Virus record (IMG/VR): IMGVR_UViG_3300042484_002457
Coordinates: 1 to 64,000 of that record
Length of the DNA: 64,000 bases
Strand: one strand, 5' to 3'
The stretch's first letter is position 1, and each line of letters opens with the position of its first letter. Position numbers and translations under genes: made by a program. The notes beneath the pieces are model-generated. The model ran no database searches. It was not told where the DNA came from and was given only the letters and a program-made list of their open reading frames with translations. Below are positions 18,051 through 30,142 of the stretch, piece by piece.

Positions 18051-18914
18051 ATGTTTAAATTTTTGCGCATCAGTCTAGGGCATAACAAAGATCTTGATCT
18101 GCGATTTCGAATCATTCCTTCGCCGCTGGCTGAACGCTGGGTTGAGCGTATGCTACAACGCACAGCCTGGCCCATGGACAACCCTGACAGATTCTACGGA
18201 TTTGGCACTCCAGCACAAGAGCATGATCGCGCTGTGGCCATGATTCAGGATTGTGTGCATACCATCAACAGCCACCAACACATCATACATGGCAAGTTTG
18301 AATTATCGCAAGACTATCTCAATTATCTGCACCACATATTTGAAGTGCATCACGGCTTGCTAGATCAGCAAACATCAGACTTTTGGAAATCAGCACCCGA
18401 GTCTGTGCGCCAAGCTCTGGCCAATTTGAACTTGGCAGTGCATCGTTGTGAAAGTGTGGCGGCAGGAACTCACCCAAGATTTGTGTGCACTTGGTTTGGT
18501 ATGCCCAAGGCTCACAAACTAGATCCAGATCTGCAAGGTATGTACGGCACTTGGGACATACAATTTGGCACAGTTTATCTAAACTATTGCGAAATTGGCA
18601 AAACTGTAGAAGATCTTGCCAACGACAACGATAAGTACATAGGCCAAGATGCGTTCCGGCCATTCAGTCACTACAGTGCAGACTTCAATGTTGCATTTTA
18701 CGATCGTAACCTAAGTGACATTTATGGCCGTGTTCAAAACTACATTGATCAACATCAAGACTTTTTTGTTGCACACAACATCAAGAGTGTGTATAATATA
18801 AAAGCACAACCACTGCGCTTTCCTGTTGCCAAACTAGAGTTTGACGGCAATCGAGAAAAGTTGTTGTTTGAAATAGCCCAGCGCCAATGGGTGCAACAAG
18901 TAATACTAGAATGA
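18051..18914 (+). CDS. Hypothetical protein
   Basis: 287-aa ORF; LNYLHHIFE, LNLAVHRCE, VYLNYCEIGK. Confidence 0.7.
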   Translation: MFKFLRISLGHNKDLDLRFRIIPSPLAERWVERMLQRTAWPMDNPDRFYGFGTPAQEHDRAVAMIQDCVHTINSHQHIIHGKFELSQDYLNYLHHIFEVHHGLLDQQTSDFWKSAPESVRQALANLNLAVHRCESVAAGTHPRFVCTWFGMPKAHKLDPDLQGMYGTWDIQFGTVYLNYCEIGKTVEDLANDNDKYIGQDAFRPFSHYSADFNVAFYDRNLSDIYGRVQNYIDQHQDFFVAHNIKSVYNIKAQPLRFPVAKLEFDGNREKLLFEIAQRQWVQQVILE

Positions 18915-20380
18915 AACAAGCAACCATTGTTATCCGCGACGAAGTAAACATCAAAATTGAGGGCTTGGATCTTGACATGCGCAAGCGCCTGGTCACAGCA
19001 TTCAAATACGAAAACCCTGCCGCACGTTACATGCCAGCGGTGCGTCTAGGAAGATGGGACGGCAAGATAGCATACTTCCAGTTAGGAGGCAGTACCTACA
19101 CAAACTTGCTACCTGAAATCATTCCCATCCTTGAGAAGTTTGATTATGATATTGAACTGGATGACCAACGCGACTATTCAAACACTTTTAACTTTGAACA
19201 GGTACGTGAGGATTCATTTGCACATGTGAAGTGGCCCAAAGGACACCCTGCCACAGGTGAACCCATAATGATGCGGGACTACCAGGTTGAAATCGTAAAC
19301 AACTTTTTAGCCAATCCGCAATGCCTGCAAGAAGTAGCAACAGGTGCAGGTAAAACAATCATGACAGCGGCCCTGAGCAATGCAGTTGCACCTTATGGGC
19401 GAAGCATTGTGATTGTGCCCAACAAGAGTCTAGTAACACAAACAGAAAAAGATTACATCAACATGCAACAAGATGTTGGTGTTTATTTTGGCGATAGAAA
19501 AGAGTACGGCCGCACTCACACTATTTGCACCTGGCAGAGTTTGAATATCTTGTTAAAGAATACCAAGGCAGGGGTAGGCGACTGTACCATTGGTGAGTTC
19601 CTTGAAGGCGTTGTATGTGTTATTGTAGACGAAGTACACATGGCCAAGGCAGATGCACTGAAAACTCTGCTGACAGGTGTAATGGCTAGAGTGCCAATTC
19701 GCTGGGGTTTGACCGGAACTATTCCCAAAGAGAAGTTTGAGAGTCAAGCATTGTTAGTAGGACTTGGTCCTGTAGTTGGTCGCTTGAGTGCCAACGAACT
19801 GCAACAGCAAGGTGTTTTGGCCAACTGTCACGTGAATATTGTGCAACTGGTAGATCATGTGGAGTACAAAGAATATCAAAGCGAGCTTAAATACTTGCTG
19901 GAAGAGTCGGGTCGTTTAGACACCATGGCTGAACTTATACGCAAGGTAAACGAAACTGGAAATACGTTGGTGTTGGTTGACAGAGTTGCGGCGGGCCACG
20001 CATTATTAGAACGCCTAGGCGATTGTGCTGTGTTTGTATCGGGCGCAACAAAAGGAACAAAAAGACAAGAAGAATATGACAAAGTTGCGGACAGCGTTGA
20101 TAAGATTATTGTGGCTACCTATGGTGTTGCCGCTGTGGGCATTAACATCCCTAGGATTTTTAATCTGGTTCTTATTGAACCTGGAAAAAGTTTTGTCCGT
20201 GTTATCCAAAGCATTGGCCGCGGCATAAGAAAAGCAGAGGACAAGGATCATGTTCAAATTTGGGACATTACCAGTACCTGCAAGTTTGCCAAACGTCATT
20301 TGACCAAACGCAAGGCCTTCTATAAAGAAGCTAACTATCCTTTCTCTGTAGAAAAGCTGGAGTGGATGAAAATAGCATAA
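18911..20380 (+). CDS. uvsW: UvsW-like SF2 DNA helicase
   Basis: RDYQ, ATGAGKT, DEVH, GLTGT, VGINIP, QSIGRGIR. Confidence 0.92.
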   Translation: MKQATIVIRDEVNIKIEGLDLDMRKRLVTAFKYENPAARYMPAVRLGRWDGKIAYFQLGGSTYTNLLPEIIPILEKFDYDIELDDQRDYSNTFNFEQVREDSFAHVKWPKGHPATGEPIMMRDYQVEIVNNFLANPQCLQEVATGAGKTIMTAALSNAVAPYGRSIVIVPNKSLVTQTEKDYINMQQDVGVYFGDRKEYGRTHTICTWQSLNILLKNTKAGVGDCTIGEFLEGVVCVIVDEVHMAKADALKTLLTGVMARVPIRWGLTGTIPKEKFESQALLVGLGPVVGRLSANELQQQGVLANCHVNIVQLVDHVEYKEYQSELKYLLEESGRLDTMAELIRKVNETGNTLVLVDRVAAGHALLERLGDCAVFVSGATKGTKRQEEYDKVADSVDKIIVATYGVAAVGINIPRIFNLVLIEPGKSFVRVIQSIGRGIRKAEDKDHVQIWDITSTCKFAKRHLTKRKAFYKEANYPFSVEKLEWMKIA

Positions 20381-21191
20381 GTTTTTTGCAGTTATCACCA
20401 TGCCAGCGATTGTAATTTGACTGTCCCCCAACTATACTAACGCAATGCGGGCACTTAAATTTAGGCTTTGGTCCTTGTAGTTTAGCAACTGTTTCTGCGG
20501 AATGTGCAACTCCTCGGTTGTGCGCAGGCTTACCTACTAACCAAGTTGGCGTCTTCCCTTTTTTAGCGTCAGACATTTTTTGTCTCGATTCAACAGTGTG
20601 CGTGGTTGTTTTTCCTTTGTTACCAGCAGATATCTTTTGTTTTGTTTCTTCTGAATGTCGATAGTGCTTGCGTGATTCTAAAATTTTAGCAACTGTTTCG
20701 GGAGAAGTAATTTTACCTTTATGTGCTGCTGACAATTTTTGTTTTGCTTCGGCAGAATGTGTTTTTCCTTTAAAAGCTGACAGCCTGCCTGCGCAAGATT
20801 TAGACAGTTTTTCTCTTGTCTCTTTGGATACAGTTTTACCTTTGTGCAATTGTGATGAGTTTTTTGCCACTTCTATCTTGGCAAGATTGAAAGCACTTCC
20901 TTTGGATATTTTTCTTTGTTGGGCAACATTTTTTGTTCTTAACATCATCCACAGTGCATACCACATACTTTTTGTATGAGCAGGATCAATGGTCATCCGA
21001 GGTAATAAAATATGAACAAGGCGATGTTCTTTTGCAGTAAGTCTTATTAGATTATTTTGATCATTTGCCCCACCTAGACTTTTTGGGATAATGTGATGTT
21101 TTTCTGTATAAGTTTCTTTTGGCAAATCTCTTGACTTTGCACGATTAATGATGCTATAATAACATTTAGTATATTTGTTTTGTAAATACAT
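20331..21191 (-). mobile_element. Free-standing HNH homing endonuclease with NUMOD3 repeats and C-terminal Zn ribbon
   Basis: EKHHIIPKSLGG.N...NL..LT.KEH...H; repeated H(S/T)xE(T/A)+xK+S; CPHC...RWHGDNC; antisense to the operon. Confidence 0.85.
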
Positions 21192-21260
21192 GGCTGATAG
21201 TTCCTTGTAAACTGTTAGAGTCAATGGATCCTGCAAGATCGCGATTGACATTTTTATTTA
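21192..21260 (-). promoter_or_regulatory. Conserved two-hairpin endonuclease leader, copy A, with TAAATA promoter
   Basis: TAAATA-AAAAT-GTCAAT-CGC-GATC-ttgcag-GATC-C-ATTGAC-TCTAAC-AGTT-tacaagg-AACT-ATCAGC-C-ATG. Confidence 0.8.
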
Positions 21261-23848: not shown

Positions 23849-24201
23849 TGGAAACTGTGTTGATAATTCTTGTGCTGCTACAAATCAAACACTGGTGCAT
23901 GGACTTTGTGTATCAAACCAATGACGAGATTGCGCACAAAGGCACCTACTGGGACTGGCGCGGGATCACACACAGTCTCAAACACGGTGCAGCAACTGGC
24001 TTGATACTGATGTTCTTTGTGCCTTTTGAGTGGGCATACTTTTTGGCAGCAGTAGATTTTATGTTGCACTATCACATTGACTGGGCAAAATCAAACTATG
24101 GCAATCGTGATATTGGTACCAAGGCATTTTGGAATCACTTGGGCCTGGACCAGTTAGCACATCAACTAGTTTATATTTTTATTGTTTGGACACTATTATG
24201 A
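23848..24201 (+). CDS. DUF3307-like membrane protein
   Basis: KH...DF..Q, HS..HG, HYHIDWAK, FW..LGLDQLAH. Confidence 0.8.
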   Translation: METVLIILVLLQIKHWCMDFVYQTNDEIAHKGTYWDWRGITHSLKHGAATGLILMFFVPFEWAYFLAAVDFMLHYHIDWAKSNYGNRDIGTKAFWNHLGLDQLAHQLVYIFIVWTLL

Positions 24202-24545
24202 TTAGGAATATCACAGGCGGCCAGGGTATACACGTTTCGGGCAGTGTGTACAACGTTCCTTATATCGACACCACTAGAGCCAGTGCTGGCATAGTGCGAT
24301 ACGTCGGTGGCAACGTTGAAGTGTATGATGGCAGCTCATGGTTACCTTTACAATCCAGCTATCCGCAGATTGAACTTGACCACGAAACAATGGAAATTAT
24401 AAAGTGGGCGCAGAACCGAATGATTGAGGAAGAACGCATGACAGCACTGGCGGCCCAACATCCCACTGTGGCAGATGCACTGCTAGCCAGAGATCGTGCC
24501 CAAGATGCTTTGCGTATTGCAGTGGTCTTGTGTGATATAAAATGA
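24198..24545 (+). CDS. Hypothetical protein
   Basis: ORF coupled to both neighbours (ATGA overlaps). Confidence 0.65.
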   Translation: MIRNITGGQGIHVSGSVYNVPYIDTTRASAGIVRYVGGNVEVYDGSSWLPLQSSYPQIELDHETMEIIKWAQNRMIEEERMTALAAQHPTVADALLARDRAQDALRIAVVLCDIK

Positions 24546-25111
24546 GCGCAGATATTGACATTGACATGCCCGACAGGGACGCATTGCTGAAGCTGATTCA
24601 GCATGTTCCAGCACGTCAGAGCAATGGGCGCCGTCACAACTCTGGCGTTTATGTCACAGACATACCAGTTGATGCCGTGAACCGCTGTGCTGCCCTGGAT
24701 TATGAAACAGCAGAACAGCGAGGTTATTTCAAAATTGACTTGTTGAACATGAGTGTGTACAGCTTGGTAAAAAGTCCTGAGCACTACAAAGCCATGTTGA
24801 GCCAACAACCTCCATGGAGTCGACTGTGGACCGATGGAGCCTGGGCTTCTCAGCTGGTGCATGTGGGCAATTACACAGACTTACTGAAAATCATGCGGCC
24901 AGATTCAATACCCAGGATGGCTGCTTTTATTAGTATTATTCGTCCTGGTAAGGCGCACTTGCAGCGGAGACCTTGGGACGAAGTGTTTGCGTCAGTGTGG
25001 GATGGAGACGAAAGTCAGGGCTACACGTTCAAGCGTAGCCACTCAATTTCTTATGCCGCATTAGTTACACTGCACATGAATCTGATCAGTCAAGCCGTCG
25101 AACCAGTGTAA
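24542..25111 (+). CDS. Miniature DNA polymerase III alpha (DnaE)-like catalytic core
   Basis: DIDID, HNSGVY, FKIDLLN, IIRPG and YTFKRSHSISYA in DnaE order within 189 aa. Confidence 0.75.
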   Translation: MSADIDIDMPDRDALLKLIQHVPARQSNGRRHNSGVYVTDIPVDAVNRCAALDYETAEQRGYFKIDLLNMSVYSLVKSPEHYKAMLSQQPPWSRLWTDGAWASQLVHVGNYTDLLKIMRPDSIPRMAAFISIIRPGKAHLQRRPWDEVFASVWDGDESQGYTFKRSHSISYAALVTLHMNLISQAVEPV

Positions 25112-25463
25112 TACTCTTGCGTTTTGACTTTTTGCGAGCTATATCTAATAGGCTACAAGTTGGACCGTGTAGGATTTCCAAGTCCTTGTTGCTAAAAGTG
25201 CGCAGTGTGCCACGAAAAGGATCCCAGTCTCTGCGCAAGAATATGTTGATGGGAATACTGCGATTGCTTTCCCACCACCAAGTTGATGCTAGTTCTAGGA
25301 ATAGAATCTTATCTTCTTGATGTTTCACTGCTCCAAAGTCGTAGATGGTTGTGACAATGTCGTCTCTGTTCTGTACTACGCCTATATACTCTGCATTGGC
25401 ATACATGCACAATGTTATGAAAGGATATTTTTCTGTCAATTTATCAAAGATGTTGTTTCCCAT
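25086..25463 (-). CDS. Hypothetical protein
   Basis: 125 aa; TAAATA 6 nt upstream; WWWESNRSIPINIFL. Confidence 0.7.
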   Translation of the reverse strand: MGNNIFDKLTEKYPFITLCMYANAEYIGVVQNRDDIVTTIYDFGAVKHQEDKILFLELASTWWWESNRSIPINIFLRRDWDPFRGTLRTFSNKDLEILHGPTCSLLDIARKKSKRKSITLVRRLD

Positions 25464-25508: not shown

Positions 25509-26579
25509 ATGTATTCCACTACCGCATATCTATACCAACAAATTACCAAAGTATTGTTAGTTGACACCAGCGGCGGCTATTTCACAATGAGGTATGACCC
25601 TGTGTACGCAAAAACTTTAACCATTAACAAAGGGGTCGACAACGTACTCCTATTTGAATTTATCAATCAAGATCAGAAGCCTGTAAACATTGCAGGCTCT
25701 ACCTTCTTGTTTCGTTTACTTAATCAAACTGGCGATGAGCTGTTTGTTCAGAAACAGTGCGAAGTCCTTAGTTCTGCACTGGGTCGCGTAAAGGTAGTTC
25801 TATCACCTGAAGATACCAATGATATTGTGGCCCAACCTGGCAGCTACAGTATTGAACGTGTGTCGGGCAATTACCACCAAGCAGTGTATGTAAACGCCAA
25901 CAGTCAGGCCCGAGCCAACTGTGACATTGTAAATAGTGTGTTCCCAGAATTTTTGCCTAGCCCGGTGCTCACAGTTCCCGACATGTACGGCAAGAATCAA
26001 TTGGTCAGTGCTGCACCTACCAACTGGCCAGACTGGGCACTTACTCCACAACCTCTTAACGGTATTCAATCAACTGAATTCTATTCAAGCTACATTCCCA
26101 CAAACGGGCAGAGCTTGACTACCATCAAGATGGACTTGGTGCATTACACTGGCACAGTCAAAATTCAAGGCGCTGAAAACTACGAATCTGTTTGGTACAA
26201 TGTAACTGAAAGTCGTAGCTATTATGACGCCACAGAAACTGTGTATTTCAATGCAGTGGGATTCCATCCCTTGTTGAGGGTGGCACTGAACAACTCAATT
26301 GGTTATGGCGCCACTGCCAATGCAACAGTCAGCAATGGAGTAGTCACTGGAATCAGCATTACCAATTCAGGAATTGGATACGTAGCCCCTCCTTATGTGC
26401 AAATACTAGGCAACGGTGCAGGCGCCGAAGCCTATTGTACCATTGGTGACAACAACCAAGTTGCTGCAATTGTGGTCACAAATGGTGGATCAGGTTATCT
26501 GCCGTTGCAATTCAACAACACTGTTTTTGCCACAGTGCTGCTCACTAACGGCAAAGTTGAAAATCTACAGTACCGATAA
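25509..26579 (+). CDS. Probable virion structural protein
   Basis: TAAATA upstream; beta-rich; C-terminal ITN.G.GY..PP.V.I.G.G.GA.A repeats typical of phage structural proteins. Confidence 0.6.
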   Translation: MYSTTAYLYQQITKVLLVDTSGGYFTMRYDPVYAKTLTINKGVDNVLLFEFINQDQKPVNIAGSTFLFRLLNQTGDELFVQKQCEVLSSALGRVKVVLSPEDTNDIVAQPGSYSIERVSGNYHQAVYVNANSQARANCDIVNSVFPEFLPSPVLTVPDMYGKNQLVSAAPTNWPDWALTPQPLNGIQSTEFYSSYIPTNGQSLTTIKMDLVHYTGTVKIQGAENYESVWYNVTESRSYYDATETVYFNAVGFHPLLRVALNNSIGYGATANATVSNGVVTGISITNSGIGYVAPPYVQILGNGAGAEAYCTIGDNNQVAAIVVTNGGSGYLPLQFNNTVFATVLLTNGKVENLQYR

Positions 26580-26617: not shown

Positions 26618-27604
26618 ATGATTGATATTACGATTTACTTGCCCGCAAAACGCAAGCAAAGTCCCAGTGGTTGGGTCAGCTTCAATGCGGTATGCTGTAC
26701 TCATAATGGCAACAGTGCAGACAAGCGCCAGCGTGGCGGAATCAAAATAACTGAACAAGGCTGGAGCTATCACTGTTTCAATTGTTCATACACTGCTAGT
26801 TTTGTACTGGGACGCACTGTAAGTTTCAAAGCACGTAGATTACTGACTTGGTTGGGTGTTTCTGAAAATGAAATTGAACACTTGAATCTTGAAAGCCTGC
26901 GTCATCGCAGCATACACGGAATTATTCAAGATCGTCAGCGTGTGGCCAACATACTACAAGGCATTGACTTTGAAGAACGCGACGATTTCCCACCGTTCTC
27001 AGAAGTGATTACTCCTGAGTTTCCGTTGTATTGGGATTACATTCAAAGTCGATGCGTACCAAAAGATTACCCACTGATGACAGCCATCAAGACTGATGGC
27101 ATACATTGGGTAAGACCATTTGTGCTGGTACCGTTCACATACGAAAACAAAGTAGTAGGTTGGAGTGCTAGGTTTTTAGACAACAAACTCCCCAAGTACA
27201 TCAATCACTCACAGCCCGGTTATGTGTTTGGAACAGATCTACAGCAACCTGGTTGGCAGCATGTGTTGGTAATGGAAGGTTTGTTTGATGCACTGAGTAT
27301 TGGTGGCCTGGCGGTGATGCACAATACCATAAGTGATAGTCAAGCAAGATTGATTCGCAATCTTGGTCGAGAGATCACTGTGGTACCAGATCAAGATCAA
27401 GCTGGACTAGAACTTGTTGATCGTGCTGTTGAACTAGGATGGGCAGTAAGCATACCCAACTGGGAAGGCTGCAAAGATGTCAACGACGCTGTAAAGAAAT
27501 ATGGTAAATTGGGCGCACTGCTAACTATTATGCAGGCTCGAGAAACCAGCCGTATCAAAATAGAATTAAGAAAGAGACAACTTGTTAAAAGATTACTCAG
27601 TTGA
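26618..27604 (+). CDS. DNA primase (Zn finger plus TOPRIM)
   Basis: YHCFNC, KYIN, VMEGLFDA, PDQDQAG, KDVND. Confidence 0.88.
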   Translation: MIDITIYLPAKRKQSPSGWVSFNAVCCTHNGNSADKRQRGGIKITEQGWSYHCFNCSYTASFVLGRTVSFKARRLLTWLGVSENEIEHLNLESLRHRSIHGIIQDRQRVANILQGIDFEERDDFPPFSEVITPEFPLYWDYIQSRCVPKDYPLMTAIKTDGIHWVRPFVLVPFTYENKVVGWSARFLDNKLPKYINHSQPGYVFGTDLQQPGWQHVLVMEGLFDALSIGGLAVMHNTISDSQARLIRNLGREITVVPDQDQAGLELVDRAVELGWAVSIPNWEGCKDVNDAVKKYGKLGALLTIMQARETSRIKIELRKRQLVKRLLS

Positions 27605-29030
27605 TGTACAACGACTGTTTTTGGAAATGATGCTGGAGGATGCAAGTTCTTATGTACGAGTCCAAAACATCTACAACCCACAGAACTTTGACCGAAGTCT
27701 AAGAGCCGCGGCTGAATTCGTCAAGGAACATTCAGACAAGTACAAGACACTGCCAGATCGTACACAGATTTCTGCGGCTACTGGAGTTAAACTTAGTCCT
27801 GTGCCTGAACTAAACGAAGGACACTTTGATTGGTTCATGGCCGAGTTTGAAAGCTTTACCAAGCGCCAAGAACTTGAACGTGCAATTTTAAAAGCAGCAG
27901 ACTTGTTGGAAAAGGGCGAATACGATCCTGTTGAAAAATTAATCAAAGACGCTGTGCAAATTTCGTTAACCAAAGATCTAGGCATGGATTTTTGGCAGGA
28001 CCCTGAAGGCATGTTCACAAGATATTTTGATTCTGGTGGACAAGTTAGCACAGGTTGGCCACAACTGGATAGACTGTTGTATGGCGGATTCAGTCGTGGT
28101 GAATTAAACATCTTTGCAGGTGGATCAGGATCAGGTAAAAGCTTGGTCATGATGAACATTGCCTTGAACTGGGTACAACTGGGTCTGCATGGTGTTTATA
28201 TAACACTGGAACTCTCAGAAGAACTTACAGGTTTGAGAACAGCAGCCATGCTTACAGACATGAGCACCAAGGACATTCGCAAAGACAAAGGTACAGCAGC
28301 ACTAAAAATCAAGATGGTGGGCAAAAAGGCCGGTAGCTATCAGGTCAAGGCACTGCCAGCACAAAGCAACATCAATGACATTCGTGCATTCTTGAAAGAA
28401 TATCAGATCAAGACAGGACACCGTGTGGACTTTATCATGATTGACTACTTGGATTTGTTGATGCCCGTGAGTGCAAAAGTCAGCCCCAATGACTTGTTTG
28501 TGAAAGACAAATATGTGAGTGAGGAACTGCGCAACTTGGCCAAGGAGCTGGGTATACTAATGGTAACAGCTAGTCAGTTGAACCGATCAGCTGTGGAAGA
28601 AATTGAATTTGATCACTCGCACATTTCGGGTGGTATCAGCAAGATCAACACAGCAGACAACGTGTTTGGTATTTTTACAAGTCGGGCTATGAAAGAGCGT
28701 GGCAAGTATCAAATTCAGTGTATGAAGTCGCGTAGTAGTACAGGCGTGGGGCAAAAGATTGATCTAGAATACAACATCGAAACCATGCGTATCACTGATG
28801 AAGGCGGCGATAATCCTGACTCGTATCGTGGCGGCCCGTCGGCTAGTGTCATGGATTCAATCAAGGCCAAGAGCCAAGTCAAGGCAGCAGAAGCTGATGG
28901 CAATGCCACTGCACCTTGGGAACCGGCAGCTAGTACCAAAGGGCGTTACTCAGATGATACTGGCAAAGTCACAGCAGATGTTCAAAGTACCAAACTCAAA
29001 CAGCTACTGGGCAAAATCAAGTCATCATGA
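27582..29030 (+). CDS. Replicative DnaB/gp41-like helicase
   Basis: GGSGSGKS, TLELSE, IDYLDL, TASQLNR, KSR. Confidence 0.92.
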   Translation: MLKDYSVDVQRLFLEMMLEDASSYVRVQNIYNPQNFDRSLRAAAEFVKEHSDKYKTLPDRTQISAATGVKLSPVPELNEGHFDWFMAEFESFTKRQELERAILKAADLLEKGEYDPVEKLIKDAVQISLTKDLGMDFWQDPEGMFTRYFDSGGQVSTGWPQLDRLLYGGFSRGELNIFAGGSGSGKSLVMMNIALNWVQLGLHGVYITLELSEELTGLRTAAMLTDMSTKDIRKDKGTAALKIKMVGKKAGSYQVKALPAQSNINDIRAFLKEYQIKTGHRVDFIMIDYLDLLMPVSAKVSPNDLFVKDKYVSEELRNLAKELGILMVTASQLNRSAVEEIEFDHSHISGGISKINTADNVFGIFTSRAMKERGKYQIQCMKSRSSTGVGQKIDLEYNIETMRITDEGGDNPDSYRGGPSASVMDSIKAKSQVKAAEADGNATAPWEPAASTKGRYSDDTGKVTADVQSTKLKQLLGKIKSS

Positions 29031-30142
29031 ACAGCGACCTGTATTGCTCTCTAATACACGGCGGACTTGAACTAAACTTCAAAGGCGGTGAAGCCACTGC
29101 CCAACATTGTTGTTTGCGCCCAGGTAGATTTGACATAGATCCCAATACTGATTTTTGGAAGGATCCCAGGTTCATTCCTTTGAGAAAACTAAACGATCAA
29201 AATCGTTGGGCACCCGGCTGCGAAAACTGCCAATCAGTAGAGTCAATTGGGTTGCCAAGCTTTCGCACAGGTATGAACGCAGGACTCAGTGGCAGCAACA
29301 ACAATCTTTCAGGACCCACACGCATTGATCTCATGTTTGATATCAGTTGCAATATTGCATGCAGAACCTGTGGAACACATTCTAGTACCTTTTGGCAAAA
29401 GCATCTCAAACAGCACAACGAGTGGACAGCGCCAATCTCTGTTGGCCAAAATCACAGCACTGTGATTGCTGCACTAGAACAGCTTGACCTGAGTAATTTA
29501 CAAATGCTAGTGTTCAGCGGCGGAGAGACTTTGCTGGGCAACTCACACTGGGAAGTGGCCAAGTGGTTGGCTGATCATGTGCCCAACGCTCAACAACAAC
29601 TGACCGTGTGTTTTCAAACCAATGGAACTCAGTCAATCAATTCACGAAATTACGAACTAATACATAAGTTTCGATTGGTCAAACTGCATCTAAGTCTTGA
29701 TGGAGTTGGCGAACAATTTGAGTATTTGCGTTGGCCTGCTAGTTGGAATCAAGTGGTTGACAACATGCTGGAAATTCGTGATAGTGCACCCAGCAACATG
29801 ATGTTTCACATTGAAGAGACGGTGAGCATCTTTAATCTGTATTACACACAGCGACTGGAATCTTGGGCCCGGGAAAATTTTGCTGCCAATCGTGAAGGTG
29901 ATGTTGTCAATCACAACAAACATGTGGCACGTGGAACGTTTGCCCTGGCAAATTGCACTCAAGAATATGTAGATGCAATGCAACAAAGTGAATACAAAAA
30001 TCTAATTCCAAAAAACTGGAAAGAAAATCCATCACGCATTTCTGCAATGATGGATTCCATACGCAAGTTTGATACTTTCAGGTCTGAATCGTTTGAGCAC
30101 ACGTTCCCTGAAGTGGCAAAGTTGTATACAAGATATCTTTAA
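29027..30142 (+). CDS. Radical SAM protein
   Basis: CNIACRTC, SGGE, TNGT, SLDG...FEYLRWP. Confidence 0.85.
   Translation: MNSDLYCSLIHGGLELNFKGGEATAQHCCLRPGRFDIDPNTDFWKDPRFIPLRKLNDQNRWAPGCENCQSVESIGLPSFRTGMNAGLSGSNNNLSGPTRIDLMFDISCNIACRTCGTHSSTFWQKHLKQHNEWTAPISVGQNHSTVIAALEQLDLSNLQMLVFSGGETLLGNSHWEVAKWLADHVPNAQQQLTVCFQTNGTQSINSRNYELIHKFRLVKLHLSLDGVGEQFEYLRWPASWNQVVDNMLEIRDSAPSNMMFHIEETVSIFNLYYTQRLESWARENFAANREGDVVNHNKHVARGTFALANCTQEYVDAMQQSEYKNLIPKNWKENPSRISAMMDSIRKFDTFRSESFEHTFPEVAKLYTRYL

What the first reader, a model, noticed from the sequence alone, without database searches (positions are those of the whole stretch)
24542..25111. 189-aa miniature C-family DNA polymerase retaining all three catalytic aspartates
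Seen: DIDID, HNSGVY, FKIDLLN, IRPG and YTFKRSHSISYA in DnaE order, with no PHP, thumb, HhH or OB regions. The ORF is intact and coupled to its upstream neighbour. Established: DnaE is over 1000 aa, and its catalytic Asp residues lie in the PDxDxD and KxDxL motifs. Inference: a minimal nucleotidyltransferase or one subunit of a split polymerase, rather than a decaying fragment.
Basis: partly seen in the sequence, partly recalled or inferred. Interest (0 to 1): 0.6.

Follow-up and report, generated by a model that had tools for sequence, protein, structure and literature searches.

The report
Half of a split mini-DnaE polymerase
This 189-residue gene is real and conserved, but it is the metal-binding half of a two-gene, stripped-down relative of the bacterial replicative polymerase; this split enzyme was already described by computation in 2021 for one group of jumbo phages and has not been tested in the laboratory.

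Summary
The ORF (24542-25111, +, 189 aa) and its motifs are as described. The window is part of a 209.5-kb uncultured jumbo-phage contig. The protein matches phrog_11778 end to end (E 1e-49). It has single-copy orthologs of about 190 aa in 96 cultured jumbo-phage records and thousands in metagenomes, with dN/dS about 0.10. D4, D6, D8, K64 and D66 are invariant.

It is not a stand-alone polymerase. The triphosphate-binding half of the palm (GxGRGS motif, Pfam PF07733) is a separate 172-aa gene 98.6 kb away in the same genome, outside the window. All 11 genomes checked have exactly one of each half, 30-224 kb apart, with the break at the same loop just before the first catalytic strand.

A natural 375-aa fused form aligns across the junction to E. 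coli Pol III alpha 319-417 (E 3.5e-6). This places D4/D6/D8 on D401/D403/D405.

A complex prediction supports binding: score 0.90, best of 3 controls 0.00.

Iyer et al. 2021 (PMC7824862) already described this split minimal Pol III alpha in group 2.2 jumbo phages, alongside a family B polymerase, which is also present here. I found no biochemical study of it.

Verdict: a new member of a known kind.

The parts
24542..25111 (+). C-terminal unit of the split minimal Pol III alpha (189 aa, P0001). It holds the second part of the palm (metal-binding strands) and a reduced fingers subdomain.
24551..24565 (+). D4-I-D6-I-D8, equivalent to E. coli alpha D401-F-D403-V-D405. The first two are catalytic carboxylates.
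   Evidence: Invariant in 9 diverse orthologs and in 77 unique orthologs. The mapping goes through the fused homolog P0290: ADFDID pairs with ADIDID and with PDFDVD of 2hnh. The M. tuberculosis DnaE1 alignment agrees.
24731..24745 (+). K64-I-D66-L-L68, equivalent to the K-x-D-x-L motif that carries the third catalytic Asp (E. coli K553/D555).
   Evidence: K64, D66 and L68 are invariant. The motif aligns to LKMDFL of M. tuberculosis DnaE1. That is a motif-level alignment with a weak score.
24941..24952 (+). R134-P135-G-K137, equivalent to the RPGP fingers motif of DnaE (E. coli 637-642 region).
   Evidence: R134, P135 and K137 are invariant. Aligned to LVALFRPGP of 2hnh.
25028..25054 (+). F163-K164-R-S-H167-S-I-S-Y171, equivalent to the FNKSHSAAY fingers motif of DnaE (E. 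coli about 750-762).
   Evidence: F163, K164, H167 and Y171 are invariant. Aligned to YGFNKSHSAAYAL of 2hnh. Local hit to phrog_405 positions 774-809.
25086..25463 (-). Small convergent gene (125 aa, phrog_11637, function unknown). Its 3' end overlaps the C-unit's 3' end by 26 nt. It sits next to the C-unit in every relative examined, including the fused form.
   Evidence: phrog_11637 matched at E 3e-29. The same arrangement is seen. It may be a functional partner, but this was not tested.
24129..24545 (+). Upstream ORF whose stop overlaps the C-unit start (ATGA). It has no family match.
18887..20380 (+). Superfamily-2 DNA helicase, marking the start of the replication module around the C-unit.
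   Evidence: phrog_16 matched at E 4e-73. Syntenic in Phosso and Paride.
26618..27604 (+). DNA primase.
   Evidence: phrog_47 matched at E 2e-29. Syntenic in Phosso and Paride.
27582..29030 (+). DnaB-like replicative helicase.
   Evidence: phrog_19 matched at E 9e-68. Syntenic in Phosso and Paride.

Best explanation
The ORF encodes the C-terminal subunit of a two-gene, minimal C-family (DnaE-type) nucleotidyltransferase found in one group of jumbo phages. This subunit supplies the beta-strands that carry the metal-binding carboxylates (D4, D6 and D66, with K64). It also supplies a cut-down fingers subdomain with the RPGK and FKRSH motifs. The other subunit is a separate 172-aa protein, P0002, at G000:C1:123097-123615, 98.6 kb downstream and outside the window. 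It supplies the first part of the palm, including the invariant GxGRGSxxxS loop that binds the triphosphate of the incoming nucleotide in DnaE. The two chains are predicted to dock non-covalently and rebuild one Pol-beta-like active site. No intein or intron is present. By inference, the heterodimer is an auxiliary DNA polymerase working beside the phage's family B replicase. Because this gene always sits in the helicase-primase-DnaB module, primer extension or gap filling at the fork is the most likely role. What is shown: homology, the conserved split point, strict co-occurrence, purifying selection and a predicted interface. What is inferred: catalysis, the substrate and the role in the cell.
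Confidence: 0.78

Rival explanations
1. The N+C heterodimer is a real Pol-beta-fold nucleotidyltransferase but not a templated DNA polymerase. It could instead be a template-independent terminal transferase, an enzyme specialised for modified nucleotides, or one acting on RNA or small-molecule substrates.
For: It lacks a thumb, a clamp-binding region and HhH/OB DNA-binding modules. Pol-beta-fold enzymes have many different activities (established knowledge). At least one relative, PA5oct, appears to carry modified guanine (PMC12191111).
Against: The retained fingers motifs (RPGK, FKxxHxxxY) are the ones DnaE uses around the incoming nucleotide and template, and they are invariant. The gene sits inside the helicase-primase-DnaB module in all relatives. 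Iyer et al. read the C-unit as template-binding.
Confidence: 0.14
2. The 189-aa protein is a self-sufficient miniature polymerase.
For: It holds all three carboxylates and two fingers motifs in a single intact, conserved ORF.
Against: It lacks the GS-loop half of the palm, which is always supplied by a co-occurring second gene. Its Asp-bearing segment is poorly ordered when modelled alone. A natural fusion shows the two halves belong to one domain.
Confidence: 0.04
3. The protein is a catalytically dead remnant kept as a structural or regulatory factor, for example one that binds or hijacks host replisome parts.
For: It is heavily reduced, and no activity has been shown.
Against: The metal ligands, the GRGS loop and the fingers motifs are all invariant across lineages that share only 33-41% identity. 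This pattern is typical of active enzymes.
Confidence: 0.03
4. The ORF is a decaying fragment or an assembly artefact that truncates a full-length dnaE.
For: None beyond its small size.
Against: Orthologs have the same length in 96 independently sequenced phage records, and 5,673 metagenomic proteins match, all 120 listed being about 189-192 aa. Of the best 150 of 447 representative clusters, all are 233 aa or shorter except one 375-aa N+C fusion. dN/dS is about 0.10. No other DnaE pieces are found in the genome.
Confidence: 0.01

Closest known systems
Split minimal DNA polymerase III alpha of group 2.2 jumbo phages (Iyer, Anantharaman, Krishnan, Burroughs, Aravind 2021, Viruses 13:63, PMC7824862); PHROGs phrog_11778 (C-unit) and phrog_11127 (N-unit)
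   Same: Same two-gene architecture: an N-terminal NTP-binding unit and a C-terminal Mg- and template-binding unit encoded far apart. Same phage group (relatives of PA5oct, Rak2, GAP32, PBECO4/121Q, Atu_ph07). Same co-occurrence with a family B polymerase and same size.
   Different: Nothing essential. This copy comes from an uncultured phage and is only 33-41% identical to cultured examples.
Bacterial DnaE / PolC (C-family replicative polymerase, Pol III alpha; e.g. PDB 2hnh, 2hpi, 3e0d, 5lew)
   Same: Pol-beta-like palm with the GRGS loop, PDxDxD and KxDxL motifs. Fingers motifs RPGx and F-x-K-S-H. Same order of elements.
   Different: About 361 residues in two chains, against 1,100-1,450 in one chain. 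It has no PHP domain, thumb, distal fingers, beta-binding/HhH region or OB/tau-binding domain. The N-unit has an extra N-terminal region of about 70 residues that did not align to DnaE.
Cyanobacterial split dnaE joined by a natural split intein (Wu, Hu and Liu 1998; from my own knowledge, not checked here)
   Same: A C-family polymerase encoded by two distant genes.
   Different: The cyanobacterial halves are spliced into one full-length chain by intein halves, and the break lies elsewhere in the protein. Here the N-unit ends 1-3 residues after EF[LF] and the C-unit starts 3 residues before DIDID, which leaves no room for intein halves. No structured RNA family was found at either locus. Assembly must therefore be non-covalent.
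Bacillus subtilis DnaE as primer-extension polymerase handing over to PolC (from my own knowledge)
   Same: A possible functional analogy: a second C-family enzyme that extends primers beside the main replicase. The genomic link to primase and DnaB here fits that idea.
   Different: The analogy is inferred from gene neighbourhood only. The main replicase here is family B, not PolC, and no activity data exist.

Membership tests
C-family DNA polymerase catalytic core (DnaE/PolC) | PDxDxD strand carrying two catalytic Asp residues | tested here: met
   D4, D6 and D8 are invariant. They map to E. coli D401/D403/D405 through the fused homolog and through M. tuberculosis DnaE1.
C-family DNA polymerase catalytic core (DnaE/PolC) | Third catalytic Asp in the K-x-D-x-L strand | tested here: met
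   K64, D66 and L68 are invariant. The motif aligns to LKMDFL of 5lew. This is a motif-level alignment with a weak score.
C-family DNA polymerase catalytic core (DnaE/PolC) | G-[GS] triphosphate-binding loop of the Pol-beta-like fold in the same polypeptide | tested here: not met
   The loop is absent from this ORF. It lies in the separate N-unit P0002 (G138-x-G140-R-G-S143, invariant), which aligns to GPGRGSG of E. coli alpha through the fused form.
C-family DNA polymerase catalytic core (DnaE/PolC) | Curated Pfam DNA_pol3_alpha (PF07733) threshold passed | tested here: not met
   The C-unit has no Pfam hit at E up to 1. The N-unit passes at 26.0 bits against the 23.9 cut-off. The fused form passes at 59.6 bits.
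C-family DNA polymerase catalytic core (DnaE/PolC) | PHP domain, thumb, beta-binding/HhH and OB domains | tested here: not met
   No PHP or other DnaE pieces were found in the 209.5-kb genome. The D8-K64 spacing of 55 residues leaves no room for a thumb. The protein ends 18 residues after the FKRSHxxSYA motif. The structural alignment stops at E. coli residue 780.
C-family DNA polymerase catalytic core (DnaE/PolC) | Template-directed DNA synthesis | not testable with these tools
   No biochemical report was found.
Split minimal Pol III alpha of group 2.2 jumbo phages (Iyer et al. 2021) | C-terminal unit of about 190 aa carrying the Mg-binding and template-binding parts | tested here: met
   phrog_11778 matched at residues 3-184 of 189. 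Orthologs are 183-214 aa.
Split minimal Pol III alpha of group 2.2 jumbo phages (Iyer et al. 2021) | Separate, distantly encoded N-terminal NTP-binding unit in the same genome | tested here: met
   P0002 lies at C1:123097-123615, 98.6 kb away.
Split minimal Pol III alpha of group 2.2 jumbo phages (Iyer et al. 2021) | Accompanied by a family B DNA polymerase | tested here: met
   An 818-aa PolB with exonuclease and polymerase domains lies at about C1:169-171.4 kb.
Split minimal Pol III alpha of group 2.2 jumbo phages (Iyer et al. 2021) | Jumbo myophage genome of the PA5oct/Rak2/GAP32/Atu_ph07 group | tested here: met
   All 96 cultured hits are such phages. The nearest complete metagenomic relatives are 345 and 364 kb. 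This contig is 209.5 kb and estimated about 58% complete.
Split minimal Pol III alpha of group 2.2 jumbo phages (Iyer et al. 2021) | The two units associate to form one active site | tested here: inconclusive
   Prediction only: score 0.90, best of 3 controls 0.00. The mark was reached by 58 of 80 solved complexes and 2 of 110 mismatched pairs (roughly, because my own alignments were used). Contact agreement is at least 96% and the partner's pLDDT is at least 89. This supports binding but does not show it.

The most novel reading that the evidence does not exclude
The two chains (361 residues together) would form a self-sufficient, thumb-less C-family polymerase, the smallest known of its class. 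It would work with the adjacent phage primase and DnaB as a dedicated primer-extension enzyme that hands over to the family B replicase. The always-adjacent small protein (phrog_11637) might serve as a third, DNA-holding subunit. The existence of a natural single-chain 375-aa form makes this directly testable with one construct.
Probability: 0.3. Interest if true: 0.65.

Novelty: new member of a known kind. Interest (0 to 1): 0.4.

Why it matters
If the pair is active, it would define the minimal catalytic core of the C-family polymerases at about 360 residues instead of more than 1,100. It would show that the Pol-beta-like palm can be assembled from two polypeptides broken right next to the catalytic strand. 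It would also explain why a large, widespread group of jumbo phages carries a second polymerase beside a T4-like family B replicase. The family is abundant: 5,673 C-unit proteins and at least 7,990 N-unit proteins in metagenomes. It is conserved across phages of many hosts, including clinically relevant Pseudomonas, Klebsiella and E. coli, yet it remains biochemically untouched. The idea itself is not new, having been published in 2021, so the value here is confirmation, a precise anatomy and a testable fused form, not a discovery.

Tried and rejected
- Pfam on the C-unit found nothing at E up to 1.
- phmmer of the C-unit against solved structures found nothing at E up to 10.
- A profile of permitted N-unit sequences (A5) against solved structures found nothing at E up to 1.
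- Foldseek with the C-unit model found nothing significant (best E 0.76), although Pol III alpha took ranks 1, 2, 3 and 5.
- Megablast of the window against cultured phages found no match.
- The supplements of Iyer et al. are not held, so I could not compare accessions.
I left those sequences out and used only window, IMG/VR, G-handle and protein-search sequences. The fold alignments were therefore shallow in diversity: 69-85% identity to the query for the C-unit and 58-94% for the N-unit.
- An Atlas look-up of the conserved small neighbour gave no usable hit.
- An Rfam scan of both loci found nothing, which argues against RNA-level joining.
- Protein trans-splicing was rejected because the chain ends leave no room for intein halves.
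- The 167-aa ORF on the opposite strand (24359-24862) was considered and set aside. It lies antisense within the upstream ORF and the C-unit gene, the C-unit reading frame is under strong purifying selection, and the antisense ORF was not itself scanned.
- I did not use read laying or the look-up of sequencing runs. The assembly-error idea was already excluded by conservation.

Full report
**1. What is there**

The ORF at 24542-25111 (+) is intact, 189 aa, and starts with ATG. Its start overlaps the stop of the upstream ORF as ATGA.

The window is the first 64 kb of a single 209,543-bp IMG/VR viral contig, estimated about 58% complete. The gene lies in a replication module:
- an SF2 helicase at 18887-20380;
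- a homing endonuclease at 20331-21251 (-);
- several conserved unknown genes and a DUF3307 membrane protein;
- this ORF, followed by a small convergent gene at 25086-25463 (phrog_11637);
- a structural-like protein;
- a primase at 26618-27604;
- a DnaB-like helicase at 27582-29030.

**2. Family and distribution**

Pfam finds nothing in this ORF. PHROGs matches phrog_11778, 'DNA polymerase', a family of about 197 aa, end to end at E 1.1e-49. There is also a weak local hit to the 1,190-position DnaE-type profile phrog_405.

tblastn finds single-copy orthologs of the same length in 96 cultured phage records. All are jumbo phages: PA5oct-like, Phosso, Atu_ph07, GAP32, CBB, PBECO4/121Q, RaK2/K64-1, XaC1, SCTP-2 and a Vibrio phage. 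Identity is 33-41%. Gene order around the ORF is conserved in these phages.

The metagenomic protein search gives 5,673 hits, and all 120 listed are about 189-192 aa. An exhaustive profile search gives 447 clusters at the 50% identity level. Among the best 150, every one is 233 aa or shorter except one.

Across 9 diverse orthologs the following residues are invariant: D4, D6, D8, H32, G35, K64, D66, L68, R134, P135, K137, F163, K164, H167 and Y171. The same residues are 100% conserved in 77 unique IMG/VR orthologs. Median pairwise dN/dS is about 0.10, although dS is about 1.8 and so near saturation. This excludes a decaying fragment and an assembly truncation.

**3. It is half of an enzyme**

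I searched the whole contig with Pfam DNA_pol3_alpha. This found a second gene at C1:123397-123609 scoring 25.3 bits, above the 23.9 cut-off. The DnaE-type profile phrog_405 is matched at positions 389-429 by that gene, and at 577-608, 652-680 and 774-809 by the window ORF. The two genes are therefore colinear with one DnaE.

The partner, P0002, is 172 aa and lies at C1:123097-123615, on the same strand, 98.6 kb downstream and outside the window. It matches phrog_11127 over its full length (E 2.7e-40) and PF07733 at 26.0 bits. Its invariant core is G138-x-G140-R-G-S143-x-x-x-S147. This is the triphosphate-binding loop of the Pol-beta-like fold.

The partner occurs in 95 cultured phage records, with essentially the same host tallies as the C-unit's 96. 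At least 7,990 metagenomic proteins match it, and JGI labels many of them 'DNA polymerase III alpha subunit'.

In ten further genomes each half is present exactly once. These are eight cultured phages and two 99-100% complete IMG/VR relatives of 345 and 364 kb. Including this genome, the two genes lie 30-224 kb apart.

The break is at the same place everywhere. N-units end 1-3 residues after EF[LF], and C-units start 3-16 residues (mostly 3) before DxDxD.

**4. Residue-level mapping to DnaE**

The exception in the exhaustive search, P0290, is 375 aa and comes from a 2.4-kb ENA metagenome contig (L115). It is a natural fusion of the two halves:
- Residues 82-180 match the N-unit (35% identity, E 4e-19).
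- Residues 190-372 match the C-unit (39% identity, E 2e-36).
- A clean open junction joins them...KEFIK-DNKEGIYNI-ADFDID....

The same convergent phrog_11637 gene follows it.

One continuous stretch across the junction matches three DnaE references:
- phrog_405 at positions 357-462 (E 6e-15);
- PF07733 at 59.6 bits;
- E. coli Pol III alpha residues 319-417 (E 3.5e-6).

In the E. coli alignment GVGRGSS pairs with GPGRGSG, KEFIK pairs with ERFLN (389-393), and ADFDID pairs with PDFDVD (400-405). Carried over through, the window's D4, D6 and D8 correspond to D401, D403 and D405. The first two are the known catalytic residues (established knowledge of E. coli alpha). The break lies in the loop equivalent to E. 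coli residues 394-397.

K64-x-D66 aligns to LKMDFL of M. tuberculosis DnaE1, which is the K553/D555 equivalent. RPGK and FKRSHSISYA align to E. coli 634-642 and 750-762. These are motif-level alignments with weak scores.

**5. Structure predictions**

The C-unit alone (AlphaFold2, 32-row alignment) has mean pLDDT 70. Residues 70-189 are mostly confident: the 10-residue block means are largely 81-95, with dips at 151-170 and at the C-terminal end. Residues 1-68, which carry the Asp strands, are mostly low.

Foldseek finds nothing significant, with Pol III alpha on top at a best E of 0.76. VIA-align places nine Pol III alpha entries on top:
- model residues 69-184 on E. coli 561-777;

**6. Do the halves bind?**

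The complex prediction gave a score of 0.90, with the best of 3 controls at 0.00. That mark was reached by 58 of 80 solved complexes and 2 of 110 mismatched pairs. These counts hold only roughly because I used my own alignments. The runs agree in at least 96% of contacts, and the partner's pLDDT is at least 89.

The C-unit's residues 3-10 (the DIDID strand), 38-46 and 60-63 touch the N-unit's residues 133-146 (the GRGS loop), 71-78 and 122-131. The model supports binding but does not show it. Because single-chain DnaE structures are solved, the pass may partly reflect memory of that fold. That is itself the likeness being claimed.

**7. How it most likely works**

The two chains dock non-covalently to rebuild one Pol-beta-like active site. 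The N-unit positions the triphosphate. The C-unit supplies the metal ligands and a reduced fingers subdomain.

Neither RNA-level nor protein-level joining is likely:
- There is no room for intein halves at the chain ends.
- No structured RNA family was found at either locus.
- Both genes have their own start and stop codons in thousands of orthologs.

The genome also has a complete family B polymerase with an exonuclease domain, so this enzyme is auxiliary. Because the gene always lies beside the primase and the DnaB-like helicase, I favour primer extension or gap filling at the fork. This is an inference.

The main rival is a nucleotidyltransferase with a different substrate. The lack of a thumb and of clamp- and DNA-binding modules keeps this open. 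So does the report of modified guanine in PA5oct (PMC12191111).

**8. Comparison with what is known**

Iyer et al. 2021 (PMC7824862) describe, for 'group 2.2' jumbo phages, a phage-specific minimal Pol III alpha. It is split into an N-terminal NTP-binding protein and a C-terminal Mg- and template-binding protein, encoded by distant genes and accompanying a family B polymerase. They suggest cooperation in strand synthesis or repair.

The window's gene meets every feature of that description. GenBank and PHROGs annotations already call many orthologs 'DNA polymerase (III alpha)'. I found no experimental study, and the 2026 review of jumbo phages does not mention the enzyme.

It is not a full member of DnaE/PolC as Pfam defines it, since the C-unit alone fails the threshold. 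It also lacks the PHP, thumb, HhH and OB modules.

**9. Verdict**

The feature is a new member of a known, computationally described kind.
- the exact split point in E. coli numbering;
- a natural single-chain form;
- selection and co-occurrence statistics;
- a complex prediction that passed its controls.

Noticed in passing
L115:1066-2193 (protein P0290; ENA ERZ28653423 scaffold_211374): A natural single-chain 375-aa fusion of the N- and C-units in DnaE order, from an AT-rich metagenomic contig, followed by the same convergent phrog_11637 gene. It is known from only one 2.4-kb contig. It may be the best construct for biochemistry.
   Followed up: partly
window 25086-25463 (-): A small 125-aa gene (phrog_11637, unknown function) is convergent with the C-unit and overlaps its 3' end in every relative examined, including the fused form. 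It may be a third component. Pfam and the Atlas give no lead.
   Followed up: partly
L008:386-958 (Agrobacterium phage Atu_ph07, NC_042013.1): The RefSeq CDS for the C-unit ortholog (YP_009611739.1) starts at L008:467. This is 27 codons downstream of the conserved ATG at L008:386, so the annotated protein lacks the catalytic DIDID strand. It is probably a start-codon mis-call.
   Followed up: partly
window 20331-21251 (-): A homing endonuclease gene (phrog_655, E 2.5e-50) lies on the opposite strand between the helicase and the next conserved gene. It overlaps the helicase's 3' end by 50 nt. Paride also has a homing endonuclease in this module.
   Followed up: no
window 29027-30142 (+): A gene for a radical SAM domain protein (phrog_14086, E 7e-8) lies directly downstream of the DnaB-like helicase and overlaps its stop. 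It may relate to nucleotide or DNA modification in this phage group.
   Followed up: no
L003:1959-2360 (G000:C1:123855-124256): A GroES/Cpn10-like gene (PF00166 at 22.0 bits, above the 21.1 cut-off; phrog_931 'head morphogenesis') lies just downstream of the N-unit gene. It resembles a T4 gp31-type co-chaperonin.
   Followed up: no
P0002 residues 1-70 (G000:C1:123097-123306): The first 70 or so residues of the N-unit did not align to DnaE in the structure comparison, yet several of them (3, 6-9, 19, 24, 28-32, 65, 69) touch the C-unit in the predicted complex. The origin of this extra domain is unknown.
   Followed up: no
window 25509-26579 (+): A 356-aa protein with structural-protein repeats (baseplate or virion-like PHROG hits at residues about 260-340) sits between the polymerase subunit and the primase. 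Phosso has a 'virion structural protein' at the same position. This is an odd insertion in a replication module.
   Followed up: no
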